From the IMG/VR virus record IMGVR_UViG_3300042544_001590, positions 124,001 through 188,000 of that record: a stretch of 64,000 bases of DNA; one strand, written 5' to 3'. A program made the translations under genes and the position numbers. Positions 327 through 61,775 of the stretch are shown one piece after another (the first letter of the stretch is position 1; each line of letters begins with the position of its first letter). Under the pieces are notes generated by a model that made no database searches, had not been told where the DNA came from, and was given only the letters and a program-made list of their open reading frames with translations.

Positions 327-563
327 TTATCCTTCAATTACTCCCCCTTTGGGAGCAGTTCTCATATCAGCGGAATACCTCACAGCACCGCCCGTTTTCT
401 GCCCATGAAATTCGTTCAGAAGCTCTGTCATATCAATGCTCTTGGCACCAAATACATGTTGCTCGTAAATGTTTCCAATCTCTGCATTGATTCGATCCTG
501 CCCCCAAGCGTCCAAAATGGCACCAGCAGAACCCCCGTATTTTTGTGAAAAGTGTCCGCTCAT
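327..563 (-). CDS. hypothetical protein
   Basis: 78 aa ORF with TAAATA-N5-ATG motif upstream. Confidence 0.6.
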   Translation of the reverse strand: MSGHFSQKYGGSAGAILDAWGQDRINAEIGNIYEQHVFGAKSIDMTELLNEFHGQKTGGAVRYSADMRTAPKGGVIEG

Positions 564-567
564 ATTT

Positions 568-1359
568 TTATTTATTATTATTCACCAAATTTTCAATGAT
601 GTTCTTACATTCAGCCGAATAACCAGCCTCGATATCATAGATTTTAGCATCTAAATCCATCAGACAAACGAAAGGGGAATGAGTTGCCACGATGATCTGA
701 TAATCTTTAGACATGCGCTTCAGAAGAGCAAACAGTTCCATCTGCTTGGGCAACGACAATGCCCTCTCAGGCTCATCCAGAAGCAATGTAACCCTACCTG
801 TGCGTGGGAGAGAGCGAATGTAATCAACTTCTCCGACTTGGGCGGGATGGGAAGAAACATACTTGGTAAGATCGGGAGGGGTCTTGAGCATGTTGAAGAG
901 CTTATTGAGCTTTTTCATTCGATACTGGCCCGATGACGGCTTCTCAATCATGGCATCCATGTGTTCCTCTTCCGTGGTCATACCATCTTCCGATGAAATT
1001 TCCTTATGGGTAAACCAAGCCCATTGGTCAATCTTCACATCTCCCTCGTTATAGAATGTGGCAGTTCCGTCCCATCCCACGATACAATCGGATTGACCGG
1101 GAGAATATGCGCGATACACATAAGGAAAATGACTTTTCTGTTGCGCTCCCAAAGCAAGTTCAGAGGAAATCCTTGACCATCCTGCAAATCCATTGGGAAT
1201 GCCACAATATGCTTTGAGCATTTTTAGAACACTGGTCTTACCTCCCCCGTTACTCGATGATAAAATATTTAGTCCTTCCGTGAAATGAAACTCAATACCC
1301 GGATGAAAATTCGGGAGTTCCGTGGCGTATCCGTTTAGTATTTTAATACTTGAAATCAT
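568..1359 (-). CDS. ABC/SMC-type (AAA_21-like) ATPase
   Basis: Walker A-like SSNGGGKTS, signature-like PSSGQ, Walker B LLLDEPE, H-loop IIVATHSP. Confidence 0.8.
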   Translation of the reverse strand: MISSIKILNGYATELPNFHPGIEFHFTEGLNILSSSNGGGKTSVLKMLKAYCGIPNGFAGWSRISSELALGAQQKSHFPYVYRAYSPGQSDCIVGWDGTATFYNEGDVKIDQWAWFTHKEISSEDGMTTEEEHMDAMIEKPSSGQYRMKKLNKLFNMLKTPPDLTKYVSSHPAQVGEVDYIRSLPRTGRVTLLLDEPERALSLPKQMELFALLKRMSKDYQIIVATHSPFVCLMDLDAKIYDIEAGYSAECKNIIENLVNNNK

Positions 1360-1360
1360 A

Positions 1361-1756
1361 TCATTTCACTCCCCAAGATGTTCCATTAAACCACTCATGT
1401 CCCGATGGGTTATTCAGCGTTGCTTCCCTACGTTTGAAAGGTTCCGGTTGAACGGGTTGTTGCGCGATTTGTTCAGCCTTCAATCTTTCAATTGATTCTC
1501 TTTTCATTCGCTCCATTTCACTATCAATTTTATTGATTTCTTCTTGGTATTCTTCGGTTGTTAAATATTCACCAAAAAGAGGATACCAATCTCTTCCAAC
1601 CAATACATCATCATCGTCATTGTTTACAGAACTGACATGGGAATCATCTTTAAGATCATCCGTTTCGTCCGTTGTTGTAAACCTGAAATTCTCATCCTCC
1701 TGTGCTTTGATTTCCACTTGCATGATAGGATTTATGGAGACGTTTAGGAATGTCAA
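1361..1756 (-). CDS. hypothetical acidic protein
   Basis: 131 aa ORF tightly packed in minus-strand cluster. Confidence 0.55.
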   Translation of the reverse strand: MTFLNVSINPIMQVEIKAQEDENFRFTTTDETDDLKDDSHVSSVNNDDDDVLVGRDWYPLFGEYLTTEEYQEEINKIDSEMERMKRESIERLKAEQIAQQPVQPEPFKRREATLNNPSGHEWFNGTSWGVK

Positions 1757-3192: not shown

Positions 3193-3645
3193 TTAGTAGT
3201 CGTCGGCTTGTTCAAAACCAGTGTTGGCGAAATCTGCCTTGGCATCCAGACGATGCCAAACATCGGAAACATATGTGGATGCAATCGTGATGGCGGAAAC
3301 CATCCAATCCTCAAATTCACATTCGTTTTTCATGTCATACAAACGATCTGCGTATTCAGCGAGTTTTTTCAACTCTGCCACAAGAACTTCATTAACTTCA
3401 TGCTTCTCGACATGACCAACTGGTTCAATTTCCATAACCATTCCATGTGCTTCAGGCTCATCGTCGTCACCGAAGTCATCGTCGTCACCAAAATCTGGCA
3501 TCATTCCATAATCATCATCGTCATCAAAATCATCACCCATATCATCACCAAAGTCATCATCCATCTCGTCATCGAATCTTTTGTTCATAACTCCACTACG
3601 GAAAGATTCCCAAAGCACGGCATTTTCTTCTCCTTTGAATTTCAT
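3193..3645 (-). CDS. acidic hypothetical protein, putative head-internal
   Basis: Asp-rich; C-terminal EDWMVSAITIASTYVSDVWHRLD recalls a segment common in large myovirus proteins; TAAATA-N5-ATG. Confidence 0.7.
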   Translation of the reverse strand: MKFKGEENAVLWESFRSGVMNKRFDDEMDDDFGDDMGDDFDDDDDYGMMPDFGDDDDFGDDDEPEAHGMVMEIEPVGHVEKHEVNEVLVAELKKLAEYADRLYDMKNECEFEDWMVSAITIASTYVSDVWHRLDAKADFANTGFEQADDY

Positions 3646-3653
3646 AGTAATAT

Positions 3654-4055
3654 TTAGTCCATCTGATCTAAATTATCCCGAATGTCCTGTCCTTGTTGTG
3701 CGGGACGGATGATTGGGAGGACTTTTGATTGATATAAATCCTTGGCGGTCTGTCCCGATGCTTGGATTTTCTTGATATTATCAGGTCTGCGTAGTAAATC
3801 TAAGATGTTTTCCAGAGCGATGCGATCAGTGCCGCTAGGAGGTTCCATGAGAGCCGCCAGAACCACATCCTCCATGTATCGGATTTCAGCGGGAGAACTC
3901 AGGGGGATCGTCTCCGCTGGCTCTTCTGGGGGCATCTCAGGTGCAGGAGCTTGACCTTCTTGGGGTGCCTGTTCCATACCAGCTTCAGGATTTTGTTCAT
4001 CCTGTTCCAGAATGGATTGATATCTTTCGATAAGTTGTAAGGTTTTTGATTTCAT
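3654..4055 (-). CDS. hypothetical protein
   Basis: ORF MKSKTLQLIERYQSILEQ...; packed cluster. Confidence 0.65.
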   Translation of the reverse strand: MKSKTLQLIERYQSILEQDEQNPEAGMEQAPQEGQAPAPEMPPEEPAETIPLSSPAEIRYMEDVVLAALMEPPSGTDRIALENILDLLRRPDNIKKIQASGQTAKDLYQSKVLPIIRPAQQGQDIRDNLDQMD

Positions 4056-5757: not shown

Positions 5758-5832
5758 AACAGGGTGGAGGGAGGGCTATGGTCTTATGTACAAACAATAA
5801 TAAGAAAATTGAAAATAATTCATATTACACTA

Positions 5833-5894: not shown

Positions 5895-6140
5895 TTACTT
5901 CCGAACACGCTTTTTCTTCCGCTTTTTACCCGATTTCGCGCTCAGTCGCCCACTTCTCGTGCTGATTCCCAACCCATACGGATTTCTGGCATCCCCCGGA
6001 GCAAACCAATCCGTGTTTTCAATTCCAGCATGTCCAGCAATATCACCCCCGAACGCACCTCCGCTTGTCATATCCTCATTCAACATGGTTTGATAAATAT
6101 TAGCAATTTCAATCTTGTCATTGACAAAGGGATGGTTCAT
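5895..6140 (-). CDS. small protein with basic C-terminal tail
   Basis: Start MNHPFVND at 6140 (TAAATA-N5-ATG); ends KSGKKRKKKRVRK. Confidence 0.65.
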   Translation of the reverse strand: MNHPFVNDKIEIANIYQTMLNEDMTSGGAFGGDIAGHAGIENTDWFAPGDARNPYGLGISTRSGRLSAKSGKKRKKKRVRK

Positions 6141-6155
6141 GTTATTATTTAGTAA

Positions 6156-6512
6156 ATGATCCGAGTAGTGAACAAATCCAAACATAAACCAACTCCCGAT
6201 GATTTCTACATCGGGCGCGGTTCCGTCATGGGTAATCCTTATCACCACAAGGAATCCAATCATCCCCAAGCCCTGTATAAGGTGGATACGGTGGAAGAAG
6301 CGATTGAGGGATATGAATCATATTTTCAAAATTGTTACTTTTCCACAGATGAAGGATTCAGGCGACAAGTTCAAAAATTGATTGATCGGGAATCAAACGA
6401 TCAAAACACTAATCTCGTCTGTTATTGCGCTCCCGATAAATGTCATGGGGATGTTATCAAAAAATTTGTAGAGGACGCAGCAAGCCAAATTAAGTGGGGA
6501 GCTTTCATGTAA
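6156..6512 (+). CDS. DUF4326-like protein
   Basis: IGRGSVMGNPY and LVCYCAPDKCHGDV motifs. Confidence 0.8.
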   Translation: MIRVVNKSKHKPTPDDFYIGRGSVMGNPYHHKESNHPQALYKVDTVEEAIEGYESYFQNCYFSTDEGFRRQVQKLIDRESNDQNTNLVCYCAPDKCHGDVIKKFVEDAASQIKWGAFM

Positions 6513-8579: not shown

Positions 8580-8845
8580 TCGAACGTAGTAAGGAAGACA
8601 TTCAAAAGATCGTTGAAAAGTGGAGTTATCTTTTAAATGCACCGTTATCTGGTAACAAAACAGCAATGTTGATTGAATCACAAGAAAAAACATATACGCT
8701 GGATCAGGTAATAGAAAGTATTGAAGATAAAGTGTTTAAACAATATGTTGAAAATTTCAAGCACGACAATGATCATTATAATCCCGATGGATATATTTCG
8801 GTTTTAGTCAAACATCACATTAACAAACACAATATCAATTTATGA
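8576..8845 (+). CDS. small accessory protein
   Basis: GTG start with AAGGAGGT upstream; coupled on both sides. Confidence 0.6.
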   Translation: MIERSKEDIQKIVEKWSYLLNAPLSGNKTAMLIESQEKTYTLDQVIESIEDKVFKQYVENFKHDNDHYNPDGYISVLVKHHINKHNINL

Positions 8846-9291
8846 CAGAAAAAAATGCCAAGAAACCACATTATGTTAATTCCAAGCTGTTCAAACAGCA
8901 ATTGGTGGAATACTATGAGACGGGAGCAAATCTGGACGAATTGGGAGTTCATCTGATGAACATTGCAGAGGGTTTGTCATATAAAATTAACTTTATTAGA
9001 TATTCTCAAAGCTGGAAATCTGAAATGATCGGGGATGCAGTTCTGAAAATGTATGCGGCTCTGGAAAAGAAATTGTATAACATCGAATCAGACTTCAACC
9101 CATTCTCATATTTCAACCGCATTGCTTGGAATGCTTTCTGCAACCGCATCAAGAAGGAGAACGGACAACACAAGGGTCTGGAGGACTACAAGGAGATGGT
9201 GTATATGGAAAGCATGAGTGGGCCAGATTCCATGGGACATGTTTACGTGAAACCGAATTTGGAGGGGGATGAATATGATGACAATGATTAA
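8842..9291 (+). CDS. gp55: late-transcription sigma factor (T4 gp55-like)
   Basis: HYVN...NIAEGLS..NFIRYS..EMIGDA...NPFSYF..IAWNAF.NRIKKE pattern; position between UvsW and gp47. Confidence 0.88.
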   Translation: MTEKNAKKPHYVNSKLFKQQLVEYYETGANLDELGVHLMNIAEGLSYKINFIRYSQSWKSEMIGDAVLKMYAALEKKLYNIESDFNPFSYFNRIAWNAFCNRIKKENGQHKGLEDYKEMVYMESMSGPDSMGHVYVKPNLEGDEYDDND

Positions 9292-14129: not shown

Positions 14130-14407
14130 TTCTTACCAAATTGGGAATATTGAGCGAGCGTTGGGCGGAGCCTTTCAAACATACCTTTTAAGTTTTCAAA
14201 GCTATTCATATTCGAAGGATTATTGAAAAAGGCTTTTTTATTGTTTTGGTAAAAATTGATAGTTCCTTTTAGATAATTTTCAATATACGAACAAAGTTCA
14301 TGCGCCTTTGCCTTGACTTTTTCTGTCTGTGGGTCATAATCATCGTAGGATGATTCCATATCAAGATTTTCGTAAATCATACTCAAGTCTTTGAAATAAT
14401 TATCCAT
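14126..14407 (-). CDS. hypothetical late protein
   Basis: TAAATA-N5-ATG; N-terminus YFKDLSMIYEN. Confidence 0.65.
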   Translation of the reverse strand: MDNYFKDLSMIYENLDMESSYDDYDPQTEKVKAKAHELCSYIENYLKGTINFYQNNKKAFFNNPSNMNSFENLKGMFERLRPTLAQYSQFGKN

Positions 14408-14442
14408 AACAATATTTAGTGAATGATGTGGTGAATTATAAT

Positions 14443-15879: not shown

Positions 15880-15907
15880 TTGACTTTGGCATTTTATGGT
15901 TTATCAT
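15880..15907 (+). promoter_or_regulatory. TTGACT-N16-TATCAT promoter, 6 nt before polymerase ATG
   Basis: Direct motif match. Confidence 0.6.
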
Positions 15908-15913
15908 TTTTTT

Positions 15914-27229: not shown

Positions 27230-27253
27230 AAAACAATTTTACTAAATAATTAA

Positions 27254-38165: not shown

Positions 38166-38180
38166 AAACTAGATTACCAT
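38162..38180 (+). promoter_or_regulatory. TTAAAAACTAGA motif, copy 3
   Basis: TACCAT ends 6 nt before ATG 38187. Confidence 0.6.
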
Positions 38181-38186
38181 CCACGT

Positions 38187-39619: not shown

Positions 39620-39627
39620 AATATACT
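39609..39627 (+). promoter_or_regulatory. TTAAAAACTAGA motif, copy 4
   Basis: TATACT ends 6 nt before ATG 39634. Confidence 0.65.
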
Positions 39628-39633
39628 ACGATT

Positions 39634-45000: not shown

Positions 45001-45630
45001 TTATGTTAAGCGTTTCCATATATAAACACCAAAAGACGGTGGGGTGATGTTATGTGCTAATGATCCACCCGTTTCTTCTATAATATTACTGTAAGAACCA
45101 TATTCCAAAATGCTGTCCATACCAGAAAAACCGTTTCCGTCTCTGAGTGTGTCGGTGTTTTCTCCCCCGGTGCCGTTCCTTACTCTGTGGCTATGTGCTG
45201 GAATTTCATTTGTTGTTAATGTGTGTTGATATTCTCCAGCATTTGATCCGGGAGATATCGTTTTATTTACCCCGTTGGTATCCGTTCCAGTGCCAACTCC
45301 CGCCAAGAATACACCATCAGAAATTTTAACCCAAGTGGTTCCCACAAATCGAGTTTGGGGATTGACATCTAAAGTATCAAGATAAACTGCCCCGACCGGA
45401 TAAAGATAATCGATAATACTGGGATAACCAGTCAATGTGAGACAATCCGCTGATAAACACCCACTAACAGATGCACCGTTTCCAGCAGAACCCAACCTTA
45501 AAGAAGATTTGTTACCCAATCCATCATAAACAGGGGGTAAATTTGCTTCAGATAGTGGAACATTTGCAGTGTGTAGAACACCTTTGTAACTATCAGCGAC
45601 GAATAAATTGGTTAAATCTGGTAAAGCCAT
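45001..45630 (-). CDS. baseplate/tail-collar protein (gp10 C-terminal-like domain)
   Basis: YPVGAVY...NP...GTTWVKI...HTLT.NEIPAHSH...HNITPP..VYIWKR. Confidence 0.7.
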   Translation of the reverse strand: MALPDLTNLFVADSYKGVLHTANVPLSEANLPPVYDGLGNKSSLRLGSAGNGASVSGCLSADCLTLTGYPSIIDYLYPVGAVYLDTLDVNPQTRFVGTTWVKISDGVFLAGVGTGTDTNGVNKTISPGSNAGEYQHTLTTNEIPAHSHRVRNGTGGENTDTLRDGNGFSGMDSILEYGSYSNIIEETGGSLAHNITPPSFGVYIWKRLT

Positions 45631-45638
45631 ATTGTTAT

Positions 45639-49639: not shown

Positions 49640-49643
49640 AAGA

Positions 49644-50129
49644 TTATTTAATGAGTAATTCCAATAGATAACCACCTTCATCAGTCACCAACTGATGAAT
49701 CTTTGAACCGCTCTGTAAATAATCTGTATTTACAAGCTTAACATCTCTCACTGATGTCGCATAATCATAGTTGGTGATGGATAAAGGTAATGTAAAAGTT
49801 GATATATCAGTATTGGTATAATATAAGGAAACCGTCGCTGTCAGTGTTTGGCTTGTGGAGATGGCAGATGGGAAGTATTCGTGTGTGTAGGTGGTCATCA
49901 GAAGAGATGAAAACACGTTGGATGCAATGTTTTGATTCTGTAGTATATCATTTTCAAAGAAATCTTCCACATTATCTCCCCAATCAATGGTTAGGTGTGT
50001 GGGAAAAATTCGTTCAGTGGCTCCCGATAACGATAATGTCAACAAGGTATGATCAACCACACCTATTGTTGAATAGGTGGTGGTTTGATTGGTGTTTGTT
50101 GAAGACAAGGATAGGAATTTGGTGTTCAT
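49644..50129 (-). CDS. Ig/PKD-like structural protein
   Basis: LTIDWGD motif, beta-rich. Confidence 0.6.
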   Translation of the reverse strand: MNTKFLSLSSTNTNQTTTYSTIGVVDHTLLTLSLSGATERIFPTHLTIDWGDNVEDFFENDILQNQNIASNVFSSLLMTTYTHEYFPSAISTSQTLTATVSLYYTNTDISTFTLPLSITNYDYATSVRDVKLVNTDYLQSGSKIHQLVTDEGGYLLELLIK

Positions 50130-52690
50130 CGTTGTTTGATTTGCTTATGGTTAATCATGGAGAACGGATTCAATTTGAAATCGAATTCCTGAATGATGAA
50201 TTGATTGTCCACGGTTTTCATGAGGAATGATATATTATATTGATCGGAGCGATTATCATAGGTGAACATGGGTTCTTCCGCCTTGATGTATGCTTCCGAT
50301 CCTCCCGACACAGCATAGAAGTTGGTCAAACCTCCCACTAAATGAATTTTTCTAATATGTTTGGTAGTATCAATTTCATAAATTGTTGGATATATTTTGA
50401 AATCGTTACCCACCACTGGATAAGTCTCAACATCCAATCTTGCGTAATACACCTTATCTTTTTTCTTATATCTCTTGGATATCTTTTGGTAAGGATTATC
50501 GTTGAACGATGTGACATATGTAGATTCTTTGGGATTTACAAATTCCCCGTTCTCGAAAAGGATTTTTTGGACGATTAGATTGTTATCGGTTTGGATAAAC
50601 ATGGTGTCACCCACCACTTCAAACGATAAAACACCTGACAATTCATTGTAAACGGAACTCAACAAGGTTGTTGAGAGATAACCGAATGTTGTTTGGAGTG
50701 GTTTCACTTCTTTGGTGTATGCATTTCTAACATACATGGTGCCAGTAGATGACAATCTTGTGAAATAATTCTCAGTGGGGGAAGATGAAAGATTGTAAAC
50801 GCTGGTTTGCAGCACTGTAGGATCGTAGTAGATGGATGGAAGCTGGAATTGTATATCACATAGCGAATTTGTTACTTTACCACCATCAATCATGAAAGTC
50901 GTTGTTTCATCGGGAACAATTTCTTGGGTAGCGTTTGCAGTCAGGGTTGGATACGAAGGATCAACCAAGGCTCTTTGCAGGGGGGACGAGTCATGAACAC
51001 CCCCTTCGATCAAACGGGAGTAATAGTAAGTGCCACTGAGAGGATAGCCACTCAAATCAGATGAAATGGTATCGGTCGCGGGAACTCCATTGCGGAAAAC
51101 ATTATAACCTTCCAGAATTTGACAACTTGGATAAAAATCGGGAGGATATACGAACTCATCAGTGAATTTACCACCAAAGAGGATATAATGACGGGAGAAA
51201 TCCGTGGTGAAACCTCCAGTGTATGAGGATAACCCCGATCTTGTGGTGTATGGGAAGGTGGAATCATCAACTGTTGAATAATCGAAGGCATATCCTTCCC
51301 CATATTTGAAATCGTAAAATGTGTGACCATCCAGAATGATATATTGTTTTTCCGTTTCGGGAATTACCTTGATGGTTTGCTTGAAGCTTCCATCATTTTT
51401 AAACAAACCATAGAGATTGTTATAGATATCCTCCTTGGCATCCTGAATGTAACCCGATTCAAACACCTTATCCAGATATTTGGAAGGTGTCGTCTCCGTT
51501 TGGGATATATAACCGTAATATTGGGAATCGCTTTTATTACTAATCGGTTGATTTTTGGCTTTTCCCGAAGAATCATTGCGTTTCAGGAACAAATCGTTGT
51601 TCACAAACGTGAGAACACCATCATTATTACCTCTGATATCAGGATCAGGAAAATAATAGATGGTATTTGGTTCCAAATTATTAAAATTGAAGGAATATGA
51701 AGGTCTTTCCCCATCAATTAAAATAATGGATAGCTTGTGGGGGCGAAAGAACCCCATTTCCATGGGTGTTTTGAACTCTTTTCTCTGCGTGGAGGCTGTT
51801 GTGGGGTATTTGGTATTGAAAAAAGAAGCTGCCGGATTATCAGCGTCCAACATCTTACCAGAAATAAAATCATATACAGTGGAACCCGTGGAAAGATAAT
51901 AATAATTGGAGGAAATATATTTTTCCGTCAATTTTCTTTTATTATCCAATAAGGAATCCCCTTCTTTCAGTTCTATCAGGGGAGCGGATACACCCGCGAA
52001 GATTTCAGGAATGAGTTCCGCATTGGTTTTGAGGAAAATATCCAACCCATAATCCAAATCCTTGTTGTCATATATCTGATCATTGGGAGTCTGATTGAAG
52101 TATTCAGGATATGTTTCATACAATTCTTCAATTTCAACTTCCAAATTGTTTTTCAGATTGGAAAAGTCATAATTGATCTTTCTGTTATCAATATTTTCCA
52201 GATAATTTATGGTGATATCCTTGATATCCTTGGTCAATCCAAAATTTGTTCCTGAAATTCGCTTCTTGGTGATCTGAAATTTGGCTTCTTCCCGTTTTTT
52301 ATTGTAATATTCCGAAATTTCAATCAATTTACGGGAATAAAACGGAATGGCAATATCAAGGTCAAGCGGATCATTGAAATCTAGCTTGGAAAGGAATTTC
52401 TGTTCCTCCAAAGTGGTGTATTCCAGATTGACATCCTGAATGAATTCCCGATAACGCTCAATGATTACGGAATTAGCATCAACAGTCTTGGTATTCTTTA
52501 CAAAATTCCATACCTTGAGATATGCTGTGTAATAATCCTGATTCTTGGAAGGATTGAACGACGCATCCATCGTTTTGATGAATTGTAGGAAAGAAAGGGG
52601 AGTATTCGCATCCAGAGCATCACGAACCATCACATTTGGATTGGTGATGGACTTGGGAATGTTCGGATAACCTAATGATGTTAGAGTCAT
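50126..52690 (-). CDS. large structural (baseplate-region) protein
   Basis: 854 aa; TAAATA-N6-ATG. Confidence 0.7.
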   Translation of the reverse strand: MTLTSLGYPNIPKSITNPNVMVRDALDANTPLSFLQFIKTMDASFNPSKNQDYYTAYLKVWNFVKNTKTVDANSVIIERYREFIQDVNLEYTTLEEQKFLSKLDFNDPLDLDIAIPFYSRKLIEISEYYNKKREEAKFQITKKRISGTNFGLTKDIKDITINYLENIDNRKINYDFSNLKNNLEVEIEELYETYPEYFNQTPNDQIYDNKDLDYGLDIFLKTNAELIPEIFAGVSAPLIELKEGDSLLDNKRKLTEKYISSNYYYLSTGSTVYDFISGKMLDADNPAASFFNTKYPTTASTQRKEFKTPMEMGFFRPHKLSIILIDGERPSYSFNFNNLEPNTIYYFPDPDIRGNNDGVLTFVNNDLFLKRNDSSGKAKNQPISNKSDSQYYGYISQTETTPSKYLDKVFESGYIQDAKEDIYNNLYGLFKNDGSFKQTIKVIPETEKQYIILDGHTFYDFKYGEGYAFDYSTVDDSTFPYTTRSGLSSYTGGFTTDFSRHYILFGGKFTDEFVYPPDFYPSCQILEGYNVFRNGVPATDTISSDLSGYPLSGTYYYSRLIEGGVHDSSPLQRALVDPSYPTLTANATQEIVPDETTTFMIDGGKVTNSLCDIQFQLPSIYYDPTVLQTSVYNLSSSPTENYFTRLSSTGTMYVRNAYTKEVKPLQTTFGYLSTTLLSSVYNELSGVLSFEVVGDTMFIQTDNNLIVQKILFENGEFVNPKESTYVTSFNDNPYQKISKRYKKKDKVYYARLDVETYPVVGNDFKIYPTIYEIDTTKHIRKIHLVGGLTNFYAVSGGSEAYIKAEEPMFTYDNRSDQYNISFLMKTVDNQFIIQEFDFKLNPFSMINHKQIKQR

Positions 52691-52699
52691 TTATCTTAT

Positions 52700-54784
52700 T
52701 TAAGCCGAATGGAATAATGATAAAGACTGATAAAGAGTATCCCGCAAAGAAATGTTCATCATTTCCGAGTTATAATCAAAATCAAATTCCTCAAAGATCG
52801 GTTCCGATGTTTCAGTGAGAATTGGATCACCATTCTCATCCCTCAGAACATGTTTGGATGAAAGGTTATCATAGAGGGTGTAATCATACACAATGCTATT
52901 GTCAACGAGGGTGTTTTCATATCCTGATTGATATTCAAAGAACAGATAATACTTCTCCAGATCAGAATATTGGTATGTATCGGGAAGAACCAAAGGCCAA
53001 CCCCAATTTGCATTGTATCCAGATAGCATGTAAGCACTCAGTCCGGTTGATTCCGTGGGTTGCTCGGTGTTTAACAACACATAGCGGTTGGAGAATTTTT
53101 CGAGGGCTACAATGGGAGTTCCCGCTGATATGATGTAGGTATCAGTGTTTATCTCATCCCCCAGATTGGTTCCAAAGATTTCTTTGGAGGAGAATCCCTT
53201 GATATCAAAATTCTCCTTAAATTTGTTATTATATCCAATCAACTTGTTCTTGCTGATTGATCCCAAGTCCAGAATACGCTTGATTTTCTCAGGATATGTG
53301 AAAAGGTTGGATTCAAACACATCATTGTCAACTCCCGTCATTTTCATTTGGGAAATCAGGGAGAATATTTCTCCTCTATCCACATCTTGGGTGTTTTCCA
53401 CGAAATTGGTGATCTTTTCATAGATTTTCTTACCAAGGGTGTCATAAGAAGAACTAAGTGTTCCAAACGCCGATCCCATAAAATCATCAAACAATACCGT
53501 CTTATCCAAAAGGAATTCTTGGAATCTCAAACCCTTAAATGTCTCTTGGGCATCAAAATCTTCATTTCTCTTTTCAATGGAAATATAATTTTTAGGATAT
53601 ACGTCGAAATAATCGGTGACACCAGCCAAGGAATAAGAAGTTCCCTGATCGTTAGTGGTAGTGAGGGAAGCACTCAACTGGACATAATGAACAACACTAT
53701 CGATGTTGAATTTCACCTTACCTCTGGCCGAACCGTAATAAGCTCCCACATCTTCCAATTCATAATAGGAAGAATTCATAACATCGCCGCTTGACAATAC
53801 TATAACATTGACATCAGAAGCGGAAAGCAAGGGGAAGTTCTTGACGCTGAAATTCTCCGAATCCTTGATCTTGACTACAAATGGGATATCAACTTGAGCA
53901 AATTTTCTCCCATCAATGTTGAAAGAATCAATCTCATAGAATTCCCCATCCAGACCATTGCTGGTGATGGACAAATCTTCAACTTCATCATTATCCACGA
54001 TAAGAGCCGATAGAGAAATCTTGGCATTATTCCGATTGTTGAGATATTCCACACTTCTATCGAAAAACAGGTCAATGTTGATTCGGTTGATGGAATCATC
54101 CTTGAAATGGATATCCTTGGTTCCCGATACCCCCACAAAAAATGAATTGTTGTCGCTTTCCGTGGCATTTATCAGATTGGTTCCCGATATCTTGGCATAG
54201 ACGGAAGTATTTTCAGTGGTAATGCGATCAATCTCCTGATATTGGTAGCTTGAGAGATAATTATTATAAATTTTCTCGTGGAAAGCATAGGTCTTATCCA
54301 AATGACGGAATTTATCCACATCATCGAAGTAATAATCGCTGTTGCTGCCACTGATACGATAGAATAGGCTTGTGATGGGAATGGTGGGGGGATAATATGC
54401 TCGTATTGTGATAGGATCACTAATTTGCCCCAATTTCCATGAAATATTATCATAATAGGTGGGACTATCAAAATCTACGGTGAACGTGTGCTTGAGATAA
54501 TCAATGATGTGGATGATCTTGTATTCTGTGGAAATCACAGCATTGGAATAGCAATCATAGAGGGTGAAATTGACGACATATTTACCCGGATTTTCCCAAT
54601 ACTTCTGAGCAGTCAGAGAAGAGGAAATCGTACCATCTCCAAAGTCCCATAAGACCCGAACATAGCTGAAATCATCCAGATCGGGAATGAACCGAAGCGG
54701 TGTCTGTTCCAAAGCATAGGAACTCAATACATTTTCGTTCTTCCAATCCAGAACATCAAATTCAATATCGCTAAAAATGCTCAT
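52700..54784 (-). CDS. PKD-domain baseplate-region protein
   Basis: VLWDFGDGT...H.W.NPGKY.V PKD-like motif; follows gp6. Confidence 0.7.
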   Translation of the reverse strand: MSIFSDIEFDVLDWKNENVLSSYALEQTPLRFIPDLDDFSYVRVLWDFGDGTISSSLTAQKYWENPGKYVVNFTLYDCYSNAVISTEYKIIHIIDYLKHTFTVDFDSPTYYDNISWKLGQISDPITIRAYYPPTIPITSLFYRISGSNSDYYFDDVDKFRHLDKTYAFHEKIYNNYLSSYQYQEIDRITTENTSVYAKISGTNLINATESDNNSFFVGVSGTKDIHFKDDSINRINIDLFFDRSVEYLNNRNNAKISLSALIVDNDEVEDLSITSNGLDGEFYEIDSFNIDGRKFAQVDIPFVVKIKDSENFSVKNFPLLSASDVNVIVLSSGDVMNSSYYELEDVGAYYGSARGKVKFNIDSVVHYVQLSASLTTTNDQGTSYSLAGVTDYFDVYPKNYISIEKRNEDFDAQETFKGLRFQEFLLDKTVLFDDFMGSAFGTLSSSYDTLGKKIYEKITNFVENTQDVDRGEIFSLISQMKMTGVDNDVFESNLFTYPEKIKRILDLGSISKNKLIGYNNKFKENFDIKGFSSKEIFGTNLGDEINTDTYIISAGTPIVALEKFSNRYVLLNTEQPTESTGLSAYMLSGYNANWGWPLVLPDTYQYSDLEKYYLFFEYQSGYENTLVDNSIVYDYTLYDNLSSKHVLRDENGDPILTETSEPIFEEFDFDYNSEMMNISLRDTLYQSLSLFHSA

Positions 54785-56592
54785 TATTCGCTATCCGTGA
54801 TTAGGATTCTATCTCCGATTGTTTGTGGTCTATAAAAATATGGGAACTTGAAAAATGGAAGTGTTGTGGTTTGGTTCACAAATTCCTCATCAACCCCCTC
54901 ATAGACAGGATTCCAGCTTATGAAGGAGATTCCGTTGAAAATCTCGTTTCCGTTGCGGGTTCTGATCTTGTCAACACCTTCCAATCCAAGAATTGTGGAT
55001 GTCAGGTCTGATAGATCAAGTCTTTGTCCCAGAGAATTGTTGAGAGGATTGAAGAAATCCAGAATAATATTAATAATTCTCTTTTTCAGGTTTTCCTTGT
55101 TGATCTTGGAATTGGATGTGCGAACGATTTCCAGCTTGGATGTCAAATACACATCCTTATCAGCAGCTTGAGCCGAATATCCAATATCAAATGCCGTGTA
55201 GATCGGATCACGGGGAACAACTTCATGACTAAGCATCTTTTTATCGGAAGTGGAGTCGATGATTAGGTTTTTCAGGCTGTTTGAAAGGAATGGGGGATAC
55301 TCCGCATCCGTTTGAACCACGAATTTGGGAACCACGAAGATATTCACATTGTTGAAGTCACAAGAATCCGCAAAATTCACCTGATTTAGTATAACCCTGT
55401 TCGATTTGTTGGGGTCAACGCAGATACGATAAAAATAATCAATATATTCCCCAATGAATCGCTTGTTATTCACCACTTCCACCGATTGGAGAACATTGGA
55501 AAGGTTTTTGGTGAGATATGTATCATAATCCACCTCAGTCACAAGCCTAAGCTGGGAACTGAGATACTTGGGAACATTCTGGCGAATCTGATCCACTGTC
55601 TCCCCATCGGAGATTGCCGTGGAATTGGCAGTATTGGAGAAATTCAGGGTAGCATTGTTTGTCAGGTCAATTATGGATGAAGGATCGACGGTAATCACAT
55701 CATTGTAGATTGCCGTGAATTGGGAAGTGTTGAAATTGAACAATTTGTTACCATTGATGACGTTCTTGCTGATAATACCCTTGTTATTATCACTCAGGAT
55801 ATAATAAACGGCAACCTGATCACCTTCGGCAAGTTTCTTACCAAACACATCATTACCGAACTTGATTTCATAATGACCATTCTCATTGAGACGAACGCTG
55901 TAATATCTATCGGAATCGGGAGTGAGGAACAGATTGTCAATCTCTTCCCATTCATACCAAGTGGCATCTCCGATTTCTTTCACATAAACACTGAGAGTTC
56001 CATGGGCAATGAAACGGTCATCGTTCTCATCCACCAGATTATCCACAACAACAGGGAACGTTTCAAATTCCTTACCTTCCGCTGTGTAGATGGGGTATTC
56101 CTGAACGGTTCCCTGATACAGAATGAGATTATTTTCAATGGAATCAATTTTCTCCGATCCGCTTGTGGTTTTCTCAAAGGAGAAATCGTTCAGGACGGTG
56201 TATTGGATGTTATTGACAAGGAAATAGGAATACTTGCGGAGAGTGTAGTTCCCCGCTGCTAGAGAGGCACTGGCGGTGCAAGTAACGGGAACAAGGGACG
56301 TTTGCTTGCCCGTAGGATTGTAACCCACAAGGTTCACAATCTTGTTCATGTTTTCATAGAGCGATGTCTGGGAGAAAAGGGCTTCCGATCCCGTCTGGTT
56401 CAAATAGAAAAGCAGGGTGTGGTAGCTGTAAGCGATAATGTCGATGAAAGAAGCCAGATTACTCCCCTCGTAATTCTGATCCGTGAATTTGGGATTCTCA
56501 TTCAACCGTTGAATGATGAAATCTTTCAGGGACAACGCATCAAAGTTGATATAGGCGTTTTTGGGCAGGTTATACTCAAGAGAATCATTCAT
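54784..56592 (-). CDS. gp6: baseplate wedge protein (T4 gp6-like)
   Basis: FDALSLK..I..RL....FTDQNYEGSNLASFIDIIAY; KFGNDVFGKK; ETVDQIR...RLVT..DY. Confidence 0.85.
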   Translation of the reverse strand: MNDSLEYNLPKNAYINFDALSLKDFIIQRLNENPKFTDQNYEGSNLASFIDIIAYSYHTLLFYLNQTGSEALFSQTSLYENMNKIVNLVGYNPTGKQTSLVPVTCTASASLAAGNYTLRKYSYFLVNNIQYTVLNDFSFEKTTSGSEKIDSIENNLILYQGTVQEYPIYTAEGKEFETFPVVVDNLVDENDDRFIAHGTLSVYVKEIGDATWYEWEEIDNLFLTPDSDRYYSVRLNENGHYEIKFGNDVFGKKLAEGDQVAVYYILSDNNKGIISKNVINGNKLFNFNTSQFTAIYNDVITVDPSSIIDLTNNATLNFSNTANSTAISDGETVDQIRQNVPKYLSSQLRLVTEVDYDTYLTKNLSNVLQSVEVVNNKRFIGEYIDYFYRICVDPNKSNRVILNQVNFADSCDFNNVNIFVVPKFVVQTDAEYPPFLSNSLKNLIIDSTSDKKMLSHEVVPRDPIYTAFDIGYSAQAADKDVYLTSKLEIVRTSNSKINKENLKKRIINIILDFFNPLNNSLGQRLDLSDLTSTILGLEGVDKIRTRNGNEIFNGISFISWNPVYEGVDEEFVNQTTTLPFFKFPYFYRPQTIGDRILITDSE

Positions 56593-56630
56593 TGTTATTA
56601 TTTAGGAGGATGATATTAAATAATCATATG
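56590..56630. promoter_or_regulatory. bidirectional late promoter cassette (variant spacing)
   Basis: CAT-N6-TATTTA-N12-TAAATA-N5-ATG. Confidence 0.6.
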
Positions 56631-58390: not shown

Positions 58391-60229
58391 TTACCAATTC
58401 TTGCAGCTTTCGGCTTTGGGGGTTCCGGGTTTCGCTTTATCGCAACCATGTCTTGCTCGAAATGCTTTCTTTCTATCAGTGTTTCCACTATCACCAGTTG
58501 CTTTCACACCTTTTTGTCCAAAATGGATTCTTTTATAACCCGAACCATCGGGGTCTTTTACACATTTAGTATATTTTTTACCCTTACGATCACTGGATGC
58601 TTTTTGAGTAACTTTGGTGCATTTCTTGGATTTTTCTAAGAACACGGCAACTTCCTGAAGATCAATCATGAAGTCGTTGATATCAACATTGAAAGATGAT
58701 GCGTATTTGTTTGCCAATTCATCAAAGGATTCGTTCACCGTTCCTTCATCTCTCATTCCTTGCACGGTGGACAACAATTGCGTTGCACTGTTAGCACCAC
58801 TTCTGGTTATAGACCAAAATCCCTTGAGTCGTGAATTGATAATATCCTTGGATGTTTTATTAAATGGTAAATTCTTGACAAGTTTCTTTAATTCTGGGAT
58901 GGCGGCATTCCATTGATCCTTTGACTTGATTTCTTCCAATTTCTTGATGAACTCTTCCATTGCCATATAACGGGGATCAACATCCAAATTCTCCAAAGGA
59001 ATGGTTTTTCTTTCCATACCTCGACCCGCAATGGAATTGAAGAATTTTTGTAATGATTGTGCTGGAAGTTCTCCGACTCTCCGCATCACTCCAATGTTTA
59101 TGTTGCGATTCAATGTGCGGGGATCAAAATTTTCCAATCCTCTATCGAATCGATTTACATGATAATCAATAAATGAAAATATGGGATTATCATCAGTTGT
59201 TAATTTTTTCAATAATCCCAATTTATAAAGAAAATCTGTTTTATTAACATTTAAAAAATCAACCCCGGTGGGTATTTCACTATCTGATATTCCATGCTCT
59301 ATTTTTAACATATCCAATATCCCTGCTGCTTTGTTGTTGATTAAACTTTTCACCTTCGCCAATACAGTATCATTGGATTTCATATTGTTGGATGTTTTTG
59401 TTTCTATTTTTGAATTTATTTCTTCAAATCGTTCATCCGCAGCGTTTGAAGCCTTTATAGCATTTATCAATTTTTTTTCAGCATCTTCTAATTTACTTTG
59501 AACGGAAGATAATTTTTTAACATCTTGTAAAAGAATAGATAATTCTATCTCCGCTTGCTGGATTTGACCGCTTAGGGTTTCCTTTTTTTCTTTAATCCTA
59601 GTATTCTTTTTTTCGGTTTTTTTTCTTTGGATAAAGGATTTGATTTGATCGATTCTATCACTACCATATAAAGAACTATCAAGAATTTCTTTGAGTCTAT
59701 TCACTTCGTCTCTCGCATCCGAAGCTTGTCCCGCTCTTTTTTGTTGAGAGACGAGAGCATTATTCCACTCTTTTTCATTATCATCATTTATAGTATCTAT
59801 TCTTAATCCTCCTACCAGTTTAATTTTACCATCTATATCTTCTTTCTTTTCACCGCTGTATATTTTTTTAAAATCTTCAAAGAATGTTTTGGAATTGAAT
59901 AGGATTGCAAAAGCATTAGCCATTTCTCTATCTCGCGCAGCTTTCAATTCATAGGTATCCTGTTGACTAACACCTTTGGAGGTGTCATAAAGATATTTTT
60001 TCATCTGATCTATTGGTTTTTGCTTTTCAAAATTGTCAACTTTGCCAACAGGACTGGACGAATAACCAGAGGAAGTTGATGCTCCAGCAACTCCCCCATC
60101 GGCTGTAATACCAGCTTGTTGCCCACTGATATTCTGTGGTCCTATATTTCGTTGCGCCCTAAAATACGCATCTCCCCCGCGAGTTCCCTTTGCTTCCAGC
60201 GCCAAATTATATAAATCATCAAAGTTCAT
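58391..60229 (-). CDS. large late protein with basic Cys-containing C-terminal domain
   Basis: TAAATA-N5-ATG; C-terminal KRIHFGQKG...RKKAFRARHGC...SCKNW. Confidence 0.7.
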   Translation of the reverse strand: MNFDDLYNLALEAKGTRGGDAYFRAQRNIGPQNISGQQAGITADGGVAGASTSSGYSSSPVGKVDNFEKQKPIDQMKKYLYDTSKGVSQQDTYELKAARDREMANAFAILFNSKTFFEDFKKIYSGEKKEDIDGKIKLVGGLRIDTINDDNEKEWNNALVSQQKRAGQASDARDEVNRLKEILDSSLYGSDRIDQIKSFIQRKKTEKKNTRIKEKKETLSGQIQQAEIELSILLQDVKKLSSVQSKLEDAEKKLINAIKASNAADERFEEINSKIETKTSNNMKSNDTVLAKVKSLINNKAAGILDMLKIEHGISDSEIPTGVDFLNVNKTDFLYKLGLLKKLTTDDNPIFSFIDYHVNRFDRGLENFDPRTLNRNINIGVMRRVGELPAQSLQKFFNSIAGRGMERKTIPLENLDVDPRYMAMEEFIKKLEEIKSKDQWNAAIPELKKLVKNLPFNKTSKDIINSRLKGFWSITRSGANSATQLLSTVQGMRDEGTVNESFDELANKYASSFNVDINDFMIDLQEVAVFLEKSKKCTKVTQKASSDRKGKKYTKCVKDPDGSGYKRIHFGQKGVKATGDSGNTDRKKAFRARHGCDKAKPGTPKAESCKNW

Positions 60230-60265
60230 ACTATTATTTAGAACAAATGACTAAATAATCCTATG
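60227..60265. promoter_or_regulatory. bidirectional late promoter cassette
   Basis: CAT-N5-TATTTA-N11-TAAATA-N5-ATG. Confidence 0.7.
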
Positions 60266-61030
60266 GGCAAGAAATTTGATGCTATCTATGAAGCTGTTGT
60301 GAGTCGTTCCGAAGTGGGGGGTTATCTTCCCGGCGATATCATAAAATTTAGGGATGGATATAAAAACACGGAAACTTACAAGTATATGCCATTCACTCTC
60401 AGGAAAGAAGTGGATGAATTGGCGACTTGCGGATTGAACATCAAAGTCGTTCAGGTTGGAGACAAACAATCAGGATATTCCATTGGAAATCAATTCAAAC
60501 CAGCATCCCAGATCGTTCTCACCATTGCTGCTGATCATGGTGGTGGTAGAACTTATGGTAGAGTGGTTGTCTGTCCCGCCATGGTTGATATGGTGGATGT
60601 GAGCGCAGGAGTTCCGGTTCCCGATCAATTCAAGCGCAAGGATACTGTCATCATCAAGCCCAAACCCTTAAAAATTGATCCAAAGATCATCACCAATGTC
60701 ACTGACAAGGGAAATGGTAAGAATACCCCCACCGATCTGAAATTGGCGGGAGAATCCAAGGCTTGGGAATCCACCAAGGAATTGGCTGATTTGTATATGG
60801 AATCTTTGGGGGAGGTTCCCCTGAGAAATATGCCTCCAGAAAAATCTTTAGGGGAGGTTCCTCGGCGTGATCCGAACACACAACCCCCAACAAAAAACAG
60901 ATTGAATTTGCTTTATGATAGATTACCAGAACTTAAAAAAGCTATAGAAGATGTGAGGTATGGTTCTTTTAAAGAGTTCTATAACAAAATTTCAGAGTTT
61001 AAGGATTTTCTTGATAACGAGTTTGTTTAA
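60263..61030 (+). CDS. hypothetical late protein
   Basis: 255 aa; internal duplication SLGEVP x2. Confidence 0.7.
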   Translation: MGKKFDAIYEAVVSRSEVGGYLPGDIIKFRDGYKNTETYKYMPFTLRKEVDELATCGLNIKVVQVGDKQSGYSIGNQFKPASQIVLTIAADHGGGRTYGRVVVCPAMVDMVDVSAGVPVPDQFKRKDTVIIKPKPLKIDPKIITNVTDKGNGKNTPTDLKLAGESKAWESTKELADLYMESLGEVPLRNMPPEKSLGEVPRRDPNTQPPTKNRLNLLYDRLPELKKAIEDVRYGSFKEFYNKISEFKDFLDNEFV

Positions 61031-61058
61031 AAATAACAATCAAATAATAAATAACATC

Positions 61059-61775
61059 ATGGCACAATATAATAACAAAGATCAGCGCAATCTGGAAGAA
61101 CTCCTTGAAGAAGGGTGGATGGATCGTCTCAAGGCACGGGGAGCCGAAGCTTTGGGTTCCGTCAAAGGAGTGGGGCAACAAATCAAAGGTGGCTTTCAAC
61201 AAGCTGCTGGCAGTGGCTTGAGTAAGGCTGGAGATTGGCTTGAAAGCGATAAGATTTCTCGTAAAGGGGATAAATACACGCAACAAGGTCAAAAAAGTGA
61301 GCGAGAAGGAAGCGTCTCTGGTCACAATGCCAAAGTCCAGTATCTTCAGAAGAATATTGACAAACGTATTGACTCATTTGTTGCCGATATCAAAAATGAT
61401 ATTAAAAAGCTTGGTCTGGACATTGGTAACATTGAAATCGTGTCTGGTATCAATGCTGCTCTTGGACAACTCAAGAAAAGCGTGAGCGGTGCAACACCTC
61501 CTCCTTTACCACAACAATCTGGCGCAACACCTCCTCCTTTACCCCAACAATCTGGCGCAACACCCCCACCACTTCCAAAACAACAAACACCGGAGCCAGA
61601 AGAGGATGAGCCGGAAAATCCCGTGGAATACTCTTACAGAAAAGCTATTAGTAGGAAGAAAAAAACACAACCAAACACTAATCCCCGTAAAAGTAAGGTG
61701 AGAAAAGACCCATTTGCAAAATATGCCGCTCCCGAACAGGAAGAGGATTTGGACAAGATGTTTTGGGAACGCTAA
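61059..61775 (+). CDS. hypothetical late protein with Pro-rich repeats
   Basis: Start MAQYNNKD by TAAATA-N5 rule; GATPPPLP(Q/K)Q x3. Confidence 0.7.
   Translation: MAQYNNKDQRNLEELLEEGWMDRLKARGAEALGSVKGVGQQIKGGFQQAAGSGLSKAGDWLESDKISRKGDKYTQQGQKSEREGSVSGHNAKVQYLQKNIDKRIDSFVADIKNDIKKLGLDIGNIEIVSGINAALGQLKKSVSGATPPPLPQQSGATPPPLPQQSGATPPPLPKQQTPEPEEDEPENPVEYSYRKAISRKKKTQPNTNPRKSKVRKDPFAKYAAPEQEEDLDKMFWER
61488..61586 (+). repeat. 33-bp coding tandem repeat x3
   Basis: gg(t/c)gcaacacc...ccacaacaatct units. Confidence 0.8.

What the first reader, a model, noticed from the sequence alone, without database searches (positions are those of the whole stretch)
561..61061. Strict TAAATA-N5-ATG grammar: late genes appear to be transcribed leaderless
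Seen: TAAATA sits exactly 5 nt before the start codon of at least 18 genes. Plus-strand starts: 23910, 27254, 33680, 40410, 56628, 60263, 61059. Minus-strand starts: 563, 3645, 4503, 5466, 6140, 14407, 15843, 23876, 40376, 45630, 60229, and GTG 49639. It sits 6 nt before 52690 and 56592. No Shine-Dalgarno sequence can fit in the gap. Established: T4 gp55 recognises the -10-only late promoter TATAAATA, and a gp55 homologue is present (8842). Inference: transcription starts at or within 1-2 nt of the AUG, so the late programme uses leaderless mRNA. This constrains the host and allows start sites to be re-annotated.
Basis: partly seen in the sequence, partly recalled or inferred. Interest (0 to 1): 0.65.

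Follow-up and report, generated by a model that had tools for sequence, protein, structure and literature searches.

The report
Late promoters fused to start codons
In this uncultivated 207-kb T4-like lake phage the late-promoter core TAAATA sits exactly five bases before the start codon of about 50 genes, so these messages should begin at the AUG with no ribosome-binding leader; this is known from Thermus phages, but I found no description of it for T4-type phages.

Summary
TAAATA-N5-ATG occurs 19 times in the window (1.45 expected) and 48 times in the 207,489-bp genome. That is a single sharp spike at gap 5, and 45 of the 48 sites open ORFs of at least 64 codons. The genome is a complete, uncultivated, distant T4-like phage with a gp55 homologue.

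In T4, TATAAATA spans -13 to -6, so N5 puts the A of ATG at +1. Independent support:
- -1 is a pyrimidine at 40 of 46 sites.
- N6 sites carry an A at the predicted +1.
- Start codons are ATG or GTG, never TTG.
- There is no Shine-Dalgarno enrichment.
- Divergent gene pairs have ATGs only 32-36 nt apart.
- TAAATA is avoided on both strands inside genes.
- 23 of 29 orthologues in an 80%-related phage keep the hexamer and spacing while flanks diverge.
- More distant relatives carry TAAATA 15-50 nt upstream, with SD-like sequences enriched upstream of starts.

Two further promoter classes are also fused to ATGs: sigma-70-like, and TWAAAAACTAG plus a -10 hexamer. About half of all genes therefore look leaderless. 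No RNA data could be obtained, so the start sites remain inferred. I judge this a new variant of a known kind, with phiYS40 and Lalka27a as precedents. The host is unresolved.

The parts
8842..9291 (+). gp55 homologue (late sigma-like factor), 149 aa
   Evidence: phrog_234 E 1.9e-23; tblastn hits to T4-type gp55 at about 40% identity; T4 synteny with gp47/gp46 downstream
561..574 (-). TAAATA-N5-ATG; start 563; 78-aa ORF
3643..3656 (-). TAAATA-N5-ATG; start 3645; 150 aa
4501..4514 (-). TAAATA-N5-ATG; start 4503; 148 aa
5464..5477 (-). TAAATA-N5-ATG; start 5466 (the longest ORF starts at 5508); 153 aa; HNH / phrog_447-like
6138..6151 (-). TAAATA-N5-ATG; start 6140 (the longest ORF starts at 6269); 81 aa
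   Evidence: the G002 orthologue keeps the motif
14405..14418 (-). TAAATA-N5-ATG; start 14407; 93 aa
15841..15854 (-). TAAATA-N5-ATG; start 15843; 466-aa conserved virion structural protein (phrog_1645; not gp23)
   Evidence: motif conserved in L002-L005
23874..23912 (.). Back-to-back pair: TAAATA-N5-ATG on both strands; starts 23876 (-, 549 aa) and 23910 (+, 243 aa); ATGs 34 nt apart
27243..27256 (+). TAAATA-N5-ATG; start 27254; 165 aa
33669..33682 (+). TAAATA-N5-ATG; start 33680; 199 aa
37503..37516 (+). Variant TAAGTA-N5-ATG; start 37514; 116 aa
   Evidence: the G002 orthologue has TAAATA-N5-ATG
37837..37850 (+). Variant TAAGTA-N5-ATG; start 37848; 105 aa
40374..40412 (.). Back-to-back pair; starts 40376 (-, 138 aa) and 40410 (+, 116 aa)
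45628..45641 (-). TAAATA-N5-ATG; start 45630; 209-aa tail / tail-fibre-like protein heading a run of motif-less genes
49637..49650 (-). TAAATA-N5-GTG; start 49639; 741 aa
   Evidence: the G002 orthologue also has N5-GTG
52688..52702 (-). TAAATA-N6-ATG; start 52690; 854 aa; A at the predicted +1 (1-nt leader)
56590..56630 (.). Back-to-back pair; start 56592 (-, N6, 602-aa baseplate wedge gp6-like) and start 56628 (+, N5, 426 aa)
60227..60265 (.). Back-to-back pair; starts 60229 (-, 612 aa) and 60263 (+, 255 aa)
61048..61061 (+). TAAATA-N5-ATG; start 61059 (the longest ORF starts at 60960); 238 aa
8075..8088 (+). TAAATA-N5-ATG inside the helicase gene, out of frame, 66-codon ORF; probably chance or an internal promoter
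15880..15916 (+). Sigma-70-like promoter TTGACT-N16-TATCAT-N6-ATG; the DNA polymerase start is probably 15914, not 15896
6121..6158 (+). Sigma-70-like promoter TTGACA-N16-TATTAT-N7-ATG; start 6156; 118 aa
24627..24663 (+). Sigma-70-like TTGACT-N16-TAAGGT-N6-ATG; start 24661; 226 aa
34269..34297 (+). Class-2 promoter TTAAAAACTAG + TACAAT; ATG 34295
38162..38189 (+). Class-2 promoter; ATG 38187
39609..39636 (+). Class-2 promoter; ATG 39634; 110 aa
40757..40783 (+). Class-2 promoter; ATG 40781

Best explanation
nnTAAATA is the gp55-type late promoter of this distant T4-like phage. It has been moved right up against the coding sequence. Host core RNA polymerase carrying the phage gp55 homologue opens the AT-rich five bases after the hexamer. 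It then initiates six bases downstream of the last A, on the A of ATG (or the G of GTG). At N6 sites it initiates on an A one base before the ATG. The resulting mRNAs carry a 5'-terminal AUG with no leader and no Shine-Dalgarno sequence, and would be read by the leaderless (70S-type, 5'-AUG-dependent) initiation route. Downstream genes of each late unit lack a motif and mostly abut or overlap the preceding stop, so they are probably translated by coupling or re-initiation.

The same design is used by two other promoter classes: sigma-70-like TTGACA-N16-TAnnnT-N5..7-ATG, and TWAAAAACTAG plus a -10 hexamer-N6-ATG. About 168 of roughly 350 genes therefore have their own start-codon-fused promoter.

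What is shown: the motif, its spacing, its gene class, its conservation, and the absence of SD. What is inferred: the transcription start point (by transfer of T4 geometry) and the mode of translation.
For: (1) Spacing spike. There are 48 sites at gap 5 against 0-6 per strand at any other gap, and 19 against 1.45 expected in the window.
(2) T4 geometry. The T4 octamer occupies -13..-6 and the segment after it is AT-rich (PMC2988020). Here the N5 is AT-rich and A(+1)TG follows.
(3) Initiation-site signature. Position -1 is a pyrimidine in 40/46 late N5 sites, against 55% at motif-less starts. At N6 sites the base at motif+6 is A in 6/8.
(4) Start codons after the motif are ATG 45, GTG 5, TTG 0. 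After class 2 they are ATG 74, GTG 0, TTG 0.
(5) There is no SD enrichment: 32/351 at -18..-4 against 31/351 in a control zone.
(6) Nine of the 48 N5 sites lie in divergent arrangements. These form four N5/N5 back-to-back pairs genome-wide plus one N6/N5 pair at window 56592/56628, and one further pair has a 45-codon ORF on one side. The ATGs are 32-36 nt apart, which leaves no room for other promoters or leaders.
(7) Gene class. Sheath, tube, portal (N6), protease, TerL (N6), gp6 wedge (N6), tail fibre and a virion protein carry the motif. DNA polymerase, helicases, UvsX, gp32, gp46/47, gp44 and gp55 do not.
(8) DNA-level selection. TAAATA is the rarest of the 15 same-composition hexamers genome-wide. 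It is also the rarest inside genes on both the sense strand (52 against a median of 114) and the antisense strand (51 against 95).
(9) Conservation. 23/29 orthologues in G002 keep TAAATA-N5-ATG while the flanks and the N5 sequence differ, and TAAGTA sites correspond to TAAATA there. N5 counts against the reversed-pattern control are G001 24/3, G002 49/3, G003 21/6 and G005 5/0.
(10) Outgroups. In G004 (66% identity in the marker protein), TAAATA lies 15-50 nt upstream and SD-like sequences are enriched (69/323 against 19). In the Kyanoviridae phage C48C1, the two TAAATA sites seen upstream of the 19 genes examined lie 21 and 28 nt from the ATG, and one of them has an intervening SD.
(11) Canonical sigma-70-type promoters in the same genome show the same -10-to-ATG distance. 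The class-2 hexamer has A-11 in 79/79 and T-7 in 78/79 relative to the ATG.
(12) Precedent. Most transcripts of the Thermus phages phiYS40 and Lalka27a are leaderless.
Against: The start point is transferred from T4, whose gp55 is only about 40% identical, so it could be off by 1-2 nt. The gp23 major capsid gene has no motif of its own and sits 63 nt after the preceding gene. SD-independent initiation on leadered RNA must therefore also work in this host, which weakens the argument that the ribosome needs a 5'-AUG. In more distant clade members some genes have N7-N11, giving 2-6-nt leaders. Three tRNA genes start immediately after the class-2 hexamer, a register that does not fit a start 7 nt downstream. 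gp33 and gp45 homologues were not identified.
Confidence: 0.8

Rival explanations
1. TAAATA is the late promoter, but the mRNAs are not strictly leaderless. Initiation would occur a few bases up- or downstream, or most protein would come from longer read-through transcripts on which these ATGs are internal.
For: The start point is only inferred. Relatives tolerate N6-N11. The gp23 gene and about half of all genes are translated without a 5'-terminal AUG and without SD. The host ribosome can therefore use leadered, SD-less starts.
Against: The spacing is strict at N5 and conserved in orthologues. There is a pyrimidine at -1 and a purine at +1. N6 sites have A at motif+6. TTG starts are absent. 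Initiation downstream of the ATG would leave 45 long ORFs without their start codon.
Confidence: 0.12
2. TAAATA-N5 is an RNA-level translation signal on polycistronic mRNA, not a promoter. It could be an A/U-rich, SD-independent ribosome-binding or re-initiation element whose TAA also stops the upstream frame.
For: The genome lacks SD. Upstream regions of motif-less genes are also A/T-rich, often with TAA a few bases before ATG. The hexamer contains a stop codon.
Against: Nine of the 48 sites lie in divergent pairs with no upstream co-directional gene. The hexamer is avoided equally on the antisense strand of genes, which an RNA signal would not cause. It equals the core recognised by gp55, and a gp55 gene is present. 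It is restricted to late-type genes. In outgroups the same hexamer lies at variable distance, in at least some cases with an SD between it and the ATG.
Confidence: 0.05
3. The pattern is a chance or compositional artefact of an AT-rich genome.
For: The genome is 39% GC, and A/T-rich hexamers are common.
Against: 19 sites against 1.45 expected, and 0 of 100 shuffles reach 19. There is a single-gap spike. TAAATA is otherwise the rarest hexamer of its composition. The pattern is conserved across related genomes.
Confidence: 0.01

Closest known systems
T4 late transcription (gp55 / gp33 / gp45 clamp; promoter TATAAATA at -13..-6)
   Same: A gp55 homologue is present. The TAAATA core is invariant. 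No -35 element is conserved. The segment after the box is AT-rich. Promoters occur on both strands and drive virion and packaging genes.
   Different: Positions -13/-12 are A and C/T rather than TA. This resembles the a/gC variant the review reports for Aeh1. The promoter is fused to the start codon. In more distant relatives (G004; C48C1, where TAAATA was seen at 2 of the 19 gene upstreams examined), the TAAATA sites lie 15-50 nt upstream, with SD-like sequences enriched or, at one C48C1 site, intervening. gp33 and gp45 were not identified here.
Thermus phages phiYS40 and Lalka27a
   Same: The strategy is phage-wide. A -10-type element lies next to the start codon, most transcripts are leaderless, and the A or G of the initiator codon is at the 5' end.
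   Different: These are unrelated phages with no gp55. Their late element differs (TAGGGT in Lalka27a). Their host is known (Deinococcus-Thermus) and their 5' ends have been mapped. phiYS40 is reported to shift host IF2/IF3 levels, and nothing comparable is known here.
Cellular leaderless genes with a -10 box adjacent to the ORF (Deinococcus-Thermus, Actinobacteria)
   Same: A TAnnnT-type box a few bp upstream of the start codon acts as a minimal promoter and gives leaderless mRNA (PMC12340547).
   Different: There the host primary sigma is used. Here three classes exist, one of them for a phage-encoded sigma-like factor.
Poxvirus late promoters (TAAATG initiator overlapping the start codon); from my own knowledge, not tested
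   Same: A late-gene TAAAT element is fused to the ATG.
   Different: This is a eukaryotic virus with its own RNA polymerase, and its mRNAs acquire a 5' poly(A) head by slippage. It is an analogy only.

Membership tests
T4-type late promoter system | Phage-encoded gp55 sigma-like factor | tested here: met
   Window 8842-9291; phrog_234 E 1.9e-23; tblastn to T4-type gp55
T4-type late promoter system | Octamer TATAAATA at the -10 position | tested here: inconclusive
   The TAAATA core is invariant by search. Positions -13/-12 are A (30/48) and C/T (38/48), not TA. A comparable variant is reported for Aeh1.
T4-type late promoter system | No conserved -35 element; AT-rich segment downstream of the box | tested here: met
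   The position matrix shows 0.3 bits or less upstream of -14. The N5 is A/T-rich.
T4-type late promoter system | Precedes late (virion, packaging) genes, on either strand | tested here: met
   Replication genes lack it.
T4-type late promoter system | gp33 co-activator and gp45 sliding clamp | tested here: inconclusive
   Pfam DNA_PPF gave no hit, but its control also rang nowhere. C48C1 gp45 gave no tblastn hit. Small ORFs gave no gp33 family. A 250-aa ORF next to gp44 (62686-63435, phrog_3980) is a candidate by position only.
T4-type late promoter system | Transcription initiates about 6 nt after the box | not testable with these tools
   No RNA data.
Leaderless mRNA | Primary 5' end at, or within a few nt of, the start codon | not testable with these tools
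   Inferred from promoter geometry only.
Leaderless mRNA | -10-type element 5-7 nt upstream of the start codon | tested here: met
   All three classes place their last T at -7 relative to the A of ATG.
Leaderless mRNA | No Shine-Dalgarno sequence | tested here: met
   The 5-nt gap leaves no room. SD-like 4-mers occur at 1/54 late starts. There is no genome-wide enrichment.
Leaderless mRNA | AUG (or GUG) start codon strongly preferred | tested here: met
   ATG 45, GTG 5, TTG 0 for the late class; ATG 74, GTG 0, TTG 0 for class 2.

The most novel reading that the evidence does not exclude
A whole, abundant clade of uncultivated freshwater T4-like phages may have collapsed the 5' leaders of all three temporal promoter classes. 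The marker protein has at least 120 clusters at 70% identity or more. Nearly half of the genes would then each have a promoter fused to the AUG, and the virus would run an essentially leaderless, SD-free expression programme. This would imply either a host lineage in which 5'-AUG and SD-independent initiation is the efficient route (a weak lead points to Planctomycetota/Verrucomicrobiota), or a phage-driven translational take-over that favours leaderless messages.
Probability: 0.45. Interest if true: 0.75.

Novelty: new variant of a known kind. Interest (0 to 1): 0.62.

Why it matters
The promoter-to-ATG rule gives exact start codons for roughly 170 genes in this genome, and for many more in hundreds of related metagenomic contigs. 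Ordinary gene callers pick longer ORFs at several of these sites.

It shows that the gp55 late system, so far described with leadered, SD-bearing mRNAs, can be rebuilt into a leaderless one. A sister lineage that keeps leaders offers a natural comparison for how and why leaders are lost.

It gives testable constraints on an unknown host: SD-independent translation, sigma-70-type -35/-10 recognition, and probably a higher GC content than the phage.

It offers about 50 natural minimal promoter/start cassettes of 14 bp, including back-to-back pairs.

Tried and rejected
- **Close cultured relatives.** Megablast of 12 kb against the phage collection found nothing. tblastn gave at most 30% identity for DNA polymerase.
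- **Named relatives.** The best 120 listed of at least 8,000 homologues of the marker protein are all unnamed or 'hypothetical'.
- **Host clues sought in G000 and not found.** WhiB, psbA, ribosomal protein S21, DUF1501 and PSD1.
- **Alternative polymerases or sigmas.** T7-type RNA polymerase gave no hit, but its control rang nowhere. Sigma70_r2 gave none.
- **gp45 and gp33.** Not identified.
- **MAG bins holding related contigs.** These are taxonomically scattered (Burkholderiales, Crocinitomicaceae, Luteolibacter, Bacteroidetes, a Nitrosomaritimum archaeon) and so uninformative.
- **DUF1501 of relative L124.** It reaches only 46-48% identity in 151 genomes of the Luteolibacter MAG's phylum, so no donor can be named.
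- **Rfam.** No family scored in the window.
- **Literature.** No paper in the held library combines leaderless transcripts with T4-type or gp55 late promoters.
- **A correction of my own.** I first took the 466-aa protein at 14443-15843 for the major capsid protein. The true gp23 homologue lies outside the window.
Full report
**What the sequence is.** The window is bases 124,001-188,000 of a single 207,489-bp contig. It is an IMG/VR virus record with direct terminal repeats, judged complete, and so uncultivated. GC content is 39%. It encodes T4-type core genes:
- family-B DNA polymerase, helicases, UvsX, gp32, gp46/gp47 and gp44;
- baseplate wedge, sheath, tube, portal, prohead protease and large terminase;
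- a gp23-type major head protein and a gp55 late sigma-like factor.

The nearest catalogued phages are cyanophage and pelagiphage T4-likes at only about 30% identity in DNA polymerase. Megablast finds nothing. Homologues of a conserved 466-aa virion protein are very numerous in lake metagenomes, and those listed are unnamed or annotated only as 'hypothetical protein'.

**Checking the observation.** TAAATA-N5-ATG occurs 19 times in the window against 1.45 +/- 1.40 in shuffles. Genome-wide, the distance from TAAATA to a following ATG shows a single spike at five bases: 48 sites, against 0-6 per strand for every other distance up to 30. Of the 48 sites, 45 open ORFs of at least 64 codons, and in 34 the ATG is the first possible start codon of its frame. 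Five more sites have GTG, eight have N6, and a variant hexamer TAAGTA occurs ten times at N5 against once in an off-register control. The two bases before the hexamer are mostly A then C/T, not TA.

**Why this is a promoter.**
- The hexamer is the core of the T4 late promoter, and a gp55 homologue is present.
- The motif precedes sheath, tube, portal, protease, terminase, baseplate wedge, tail fibre and virion protein genes. It is absent from the replication genes.
- Nine of the 48 sites lie in divergent arrangements whose ATGs are 32-36 nt apart. The intergenic DNA there consists of little more than two opposed hexamers.
- TAAATA is the rarest of the 15 hexamers with its composition in this genome and in two relatives. 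Inside genes it is equally depleted on the sense and the antisense strand. That pattern is expected for a DNA signal that works in either orientation, not for an mRNA signal.
- In a phage whose marker protein is 80% identical (G002), 23 of 29 orthologues keep TAAATA-N5-ATG although the flanks and the five spacer bases differ. Four TAAGTA sites here are TAAATA there.
- The N5 excess is also present in G001, G003 and G005 and in further members fetched independently.

**Why the transcripts should be leaderless.**
- The review of T4 late transcription numbers the octamer from -13 to -6 and notes AT-richness just downstream (PMC2988020). With five bases after the last A, the A of ATG is +1.
- Position -1 is a pyrimidine at 40 of 46 late sites, against 55% at motif-less starts. 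This is the usual pyrimidine(-1)/purine(+1) preference of initiation.
- At N6 sites the base at motif+6 is A in 6 of 8, which predicts a one-base leader.
- Start codons are ATG or GTG and never TTG. This fits both a purine start for transcription and the 5'-AUG requirement of leaderless translation.
- SD-like sequences are not enriched anywhere in the genome.

**The comparative contrast is the strongest argument.** G004 is a complete 246-kb relative with 66% identity in the marker protein. There TAAATA is still enriched upstream of genes, but it lies 15-50 nt from the ATG with no N5 spike. SD-like sequences are enriched there, 69 of 323 against 19 in the control zone. The Kyanoviridae phage C48C1 shows the classical arrangement at the two TAAATA sites found upstream of the 19 genes I examined: TAAATA 21 and 28 nt upstream, one of them followed by an SD. 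The clade that includes this window has therefore lost both the leader and the SD.

A far commoner grammar, TWAAAAACTAG followed by a -10-like hexamer and six bases, precedes 79 ATGs, and 17 more with nine bases. Most of these lie in genome kb 7.5-67, outside the window, with one copy per small gene. Relative to the ATG its hexamer has A-11 in 79 of 79, T-7 in 78 of 79, and a pyrimidine at -1 in 79 of 79. A third class is a canonical TTGACA-N16-TAnnnT box placed 5-7 bases before ATGs. It includes DNA polymerase, whose start is probably window 15914 rather than 15896. All three classes put their last T at -7 with respect to the A of ATG. About 168 of 350 crude gene calls carry one of these promoters. 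Of the rest, half start within 20 nt of the preceding stop, most often as a 4-nt ATGA overlap, which suggests coupling.

**Limits.**
- No RNA data could be obtained, so the start point is inferred.
- The gp23 major head gene has no motif and follows its neighbour after 63 nt without an SD. SD-independent internal initiation must therefore also be efficient.
- More distant clade members show N7-N11 at some genes.
- Three tRNA genes begin immediately after the class-2 hexamer. This does not fit a start seven bases downstream. In G002 one tRNA sits exactly at the predicted +1 and another five bases after it. I leave this unexplained.

**Host.** The host remains unknown.
- The phage uses TTGACA/TAnnnT boxes. 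To my knowledge this argues against Bacteroidota, whose primary sigma uses TTTG/TAnnTTTG.
- It has no SD usage.
- It carries 13 tRNAs that all read A/U-ending codons, which hints at a host of higher GC.
- It lacks WhiB, psbA and S21.
- A relative (L124) carries PSCyt2/PSD1 and DUF1501 genes behind TAAATA boxes. To my knowledge these families are typical of Planctomycetota and Verrucomicrobiota. The best identities found were only 46-48%, so this is a weak lead.

**Comparison with what is known, and verdict.** Leaderless, promoter-adjacent genes are established in Deinococcus-Thermus. They are also established in the Thermus phages phiYS40 and Lalka27a, where most transcripts start on the initiator codon. 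I found no report of this for T4-type or gp55 promoters in the held library. The decisive test is 5'-end mapping.

Noticed in passing
Whole genome, mostly G000 7.5-67 kb (+); in the window at 34269-34297, 38162-38189, 39609-39636 and 40757-40783: A second, commoner grammar is TWAAAAACTAG (-25..-15) plus a -10-like hexamer (-12..-7; A-11 79/79, T-7 78/79), then N6-ATG (79 sites) or N9-ATG (17 sites, with a conserved CACC before the ATG). There is one copy per small gene. It is probably an early or middle promoter class with a novel upstream element, and it is conserved in G002.
   Followed up: partly
G000 57,791, 59,643 and 59,738 (outside the window; loci L117 and L118): Three tRNA genes (Ile, Met, Arg) begin immediately after the class-2 hexamer, six bases upstream of the position the mRNA register predicts as the start. 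In G002 one tRNA sits exactly at the predicted +1. This is unexplained.
   Followed up: partly
Window 15880-15916: The DNA polymerase gene is preceded by TTGACT-N16-TATCAT-N6-ATG. The likely start is 15914, 18 nt inside the longest ORF (15896).
   Followed up: partly
Window 5510-5880: An AT-rich non-coding stretch holds two tandem units. Each has a sigma-70-like promoter (TTGACW, then TAWARt) followed by a G-run element GGGTGGnGGGnGGGCT and GTACAAAC. It could be a small RNA or an origin-like region. There was no Rfam match.
   Followed up: partly
Window 10755-11708 and 12010-12906: The gp46/SbcC-like gene is split into two ORFs that match the N- and C-terminal halves of phrog_77. A 108-aa ORF (11705-12031) lies between them, possibly an inserted mobile gene.
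   Followed up: no
G000 107,493-106,033 (-), locus L120: The gp23-type major head gene (phrog_138) has no promoter motif and no SD. It follows a late-promoter gene after a 63-nt spacer. Two homing-endonuclease genes with TAAGTA-N5-ATG lie just beside it (103,757 and 105,236).
   Followed up: partly
G000 72.7-75.5 kb and 57.7-59.8 kb; 76,574/76,607: Thirteen tRNA genes all read A/U-ending codons. A phage tRNA nucleotidyltransferase (508 aa) is driven by one arm of a back-to-back TAAATA pair.
   Followed up: no
Locus L124 5196-8217 and 13092-14348: A clade member (74% identity in the marker protein) carries PSCyt2/PSD1 and two DUF1501 genes behind TAAATA boxes. The best cellular identity is 46-48% in the phylum of a Luteolibacter MAG. 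This is a weak host lead towards the PVC bacteria.
   Followed up: partly
Window 28703-29053 and 29086-29373: Two adjacent small genes have nearly identical upstream sequences ending in TAAATT-ATG. They look like tandem paralogues translated by coupling.
   Followed up: no
Window 62686-63435 (-): A 250-aa ORF (phrog_3980, unknown function) lies directly upstream of the gp44 clamp loader. By position it is a candidate for the sliding clamp gp45, which sequence searches did not find.
   Followed up: no
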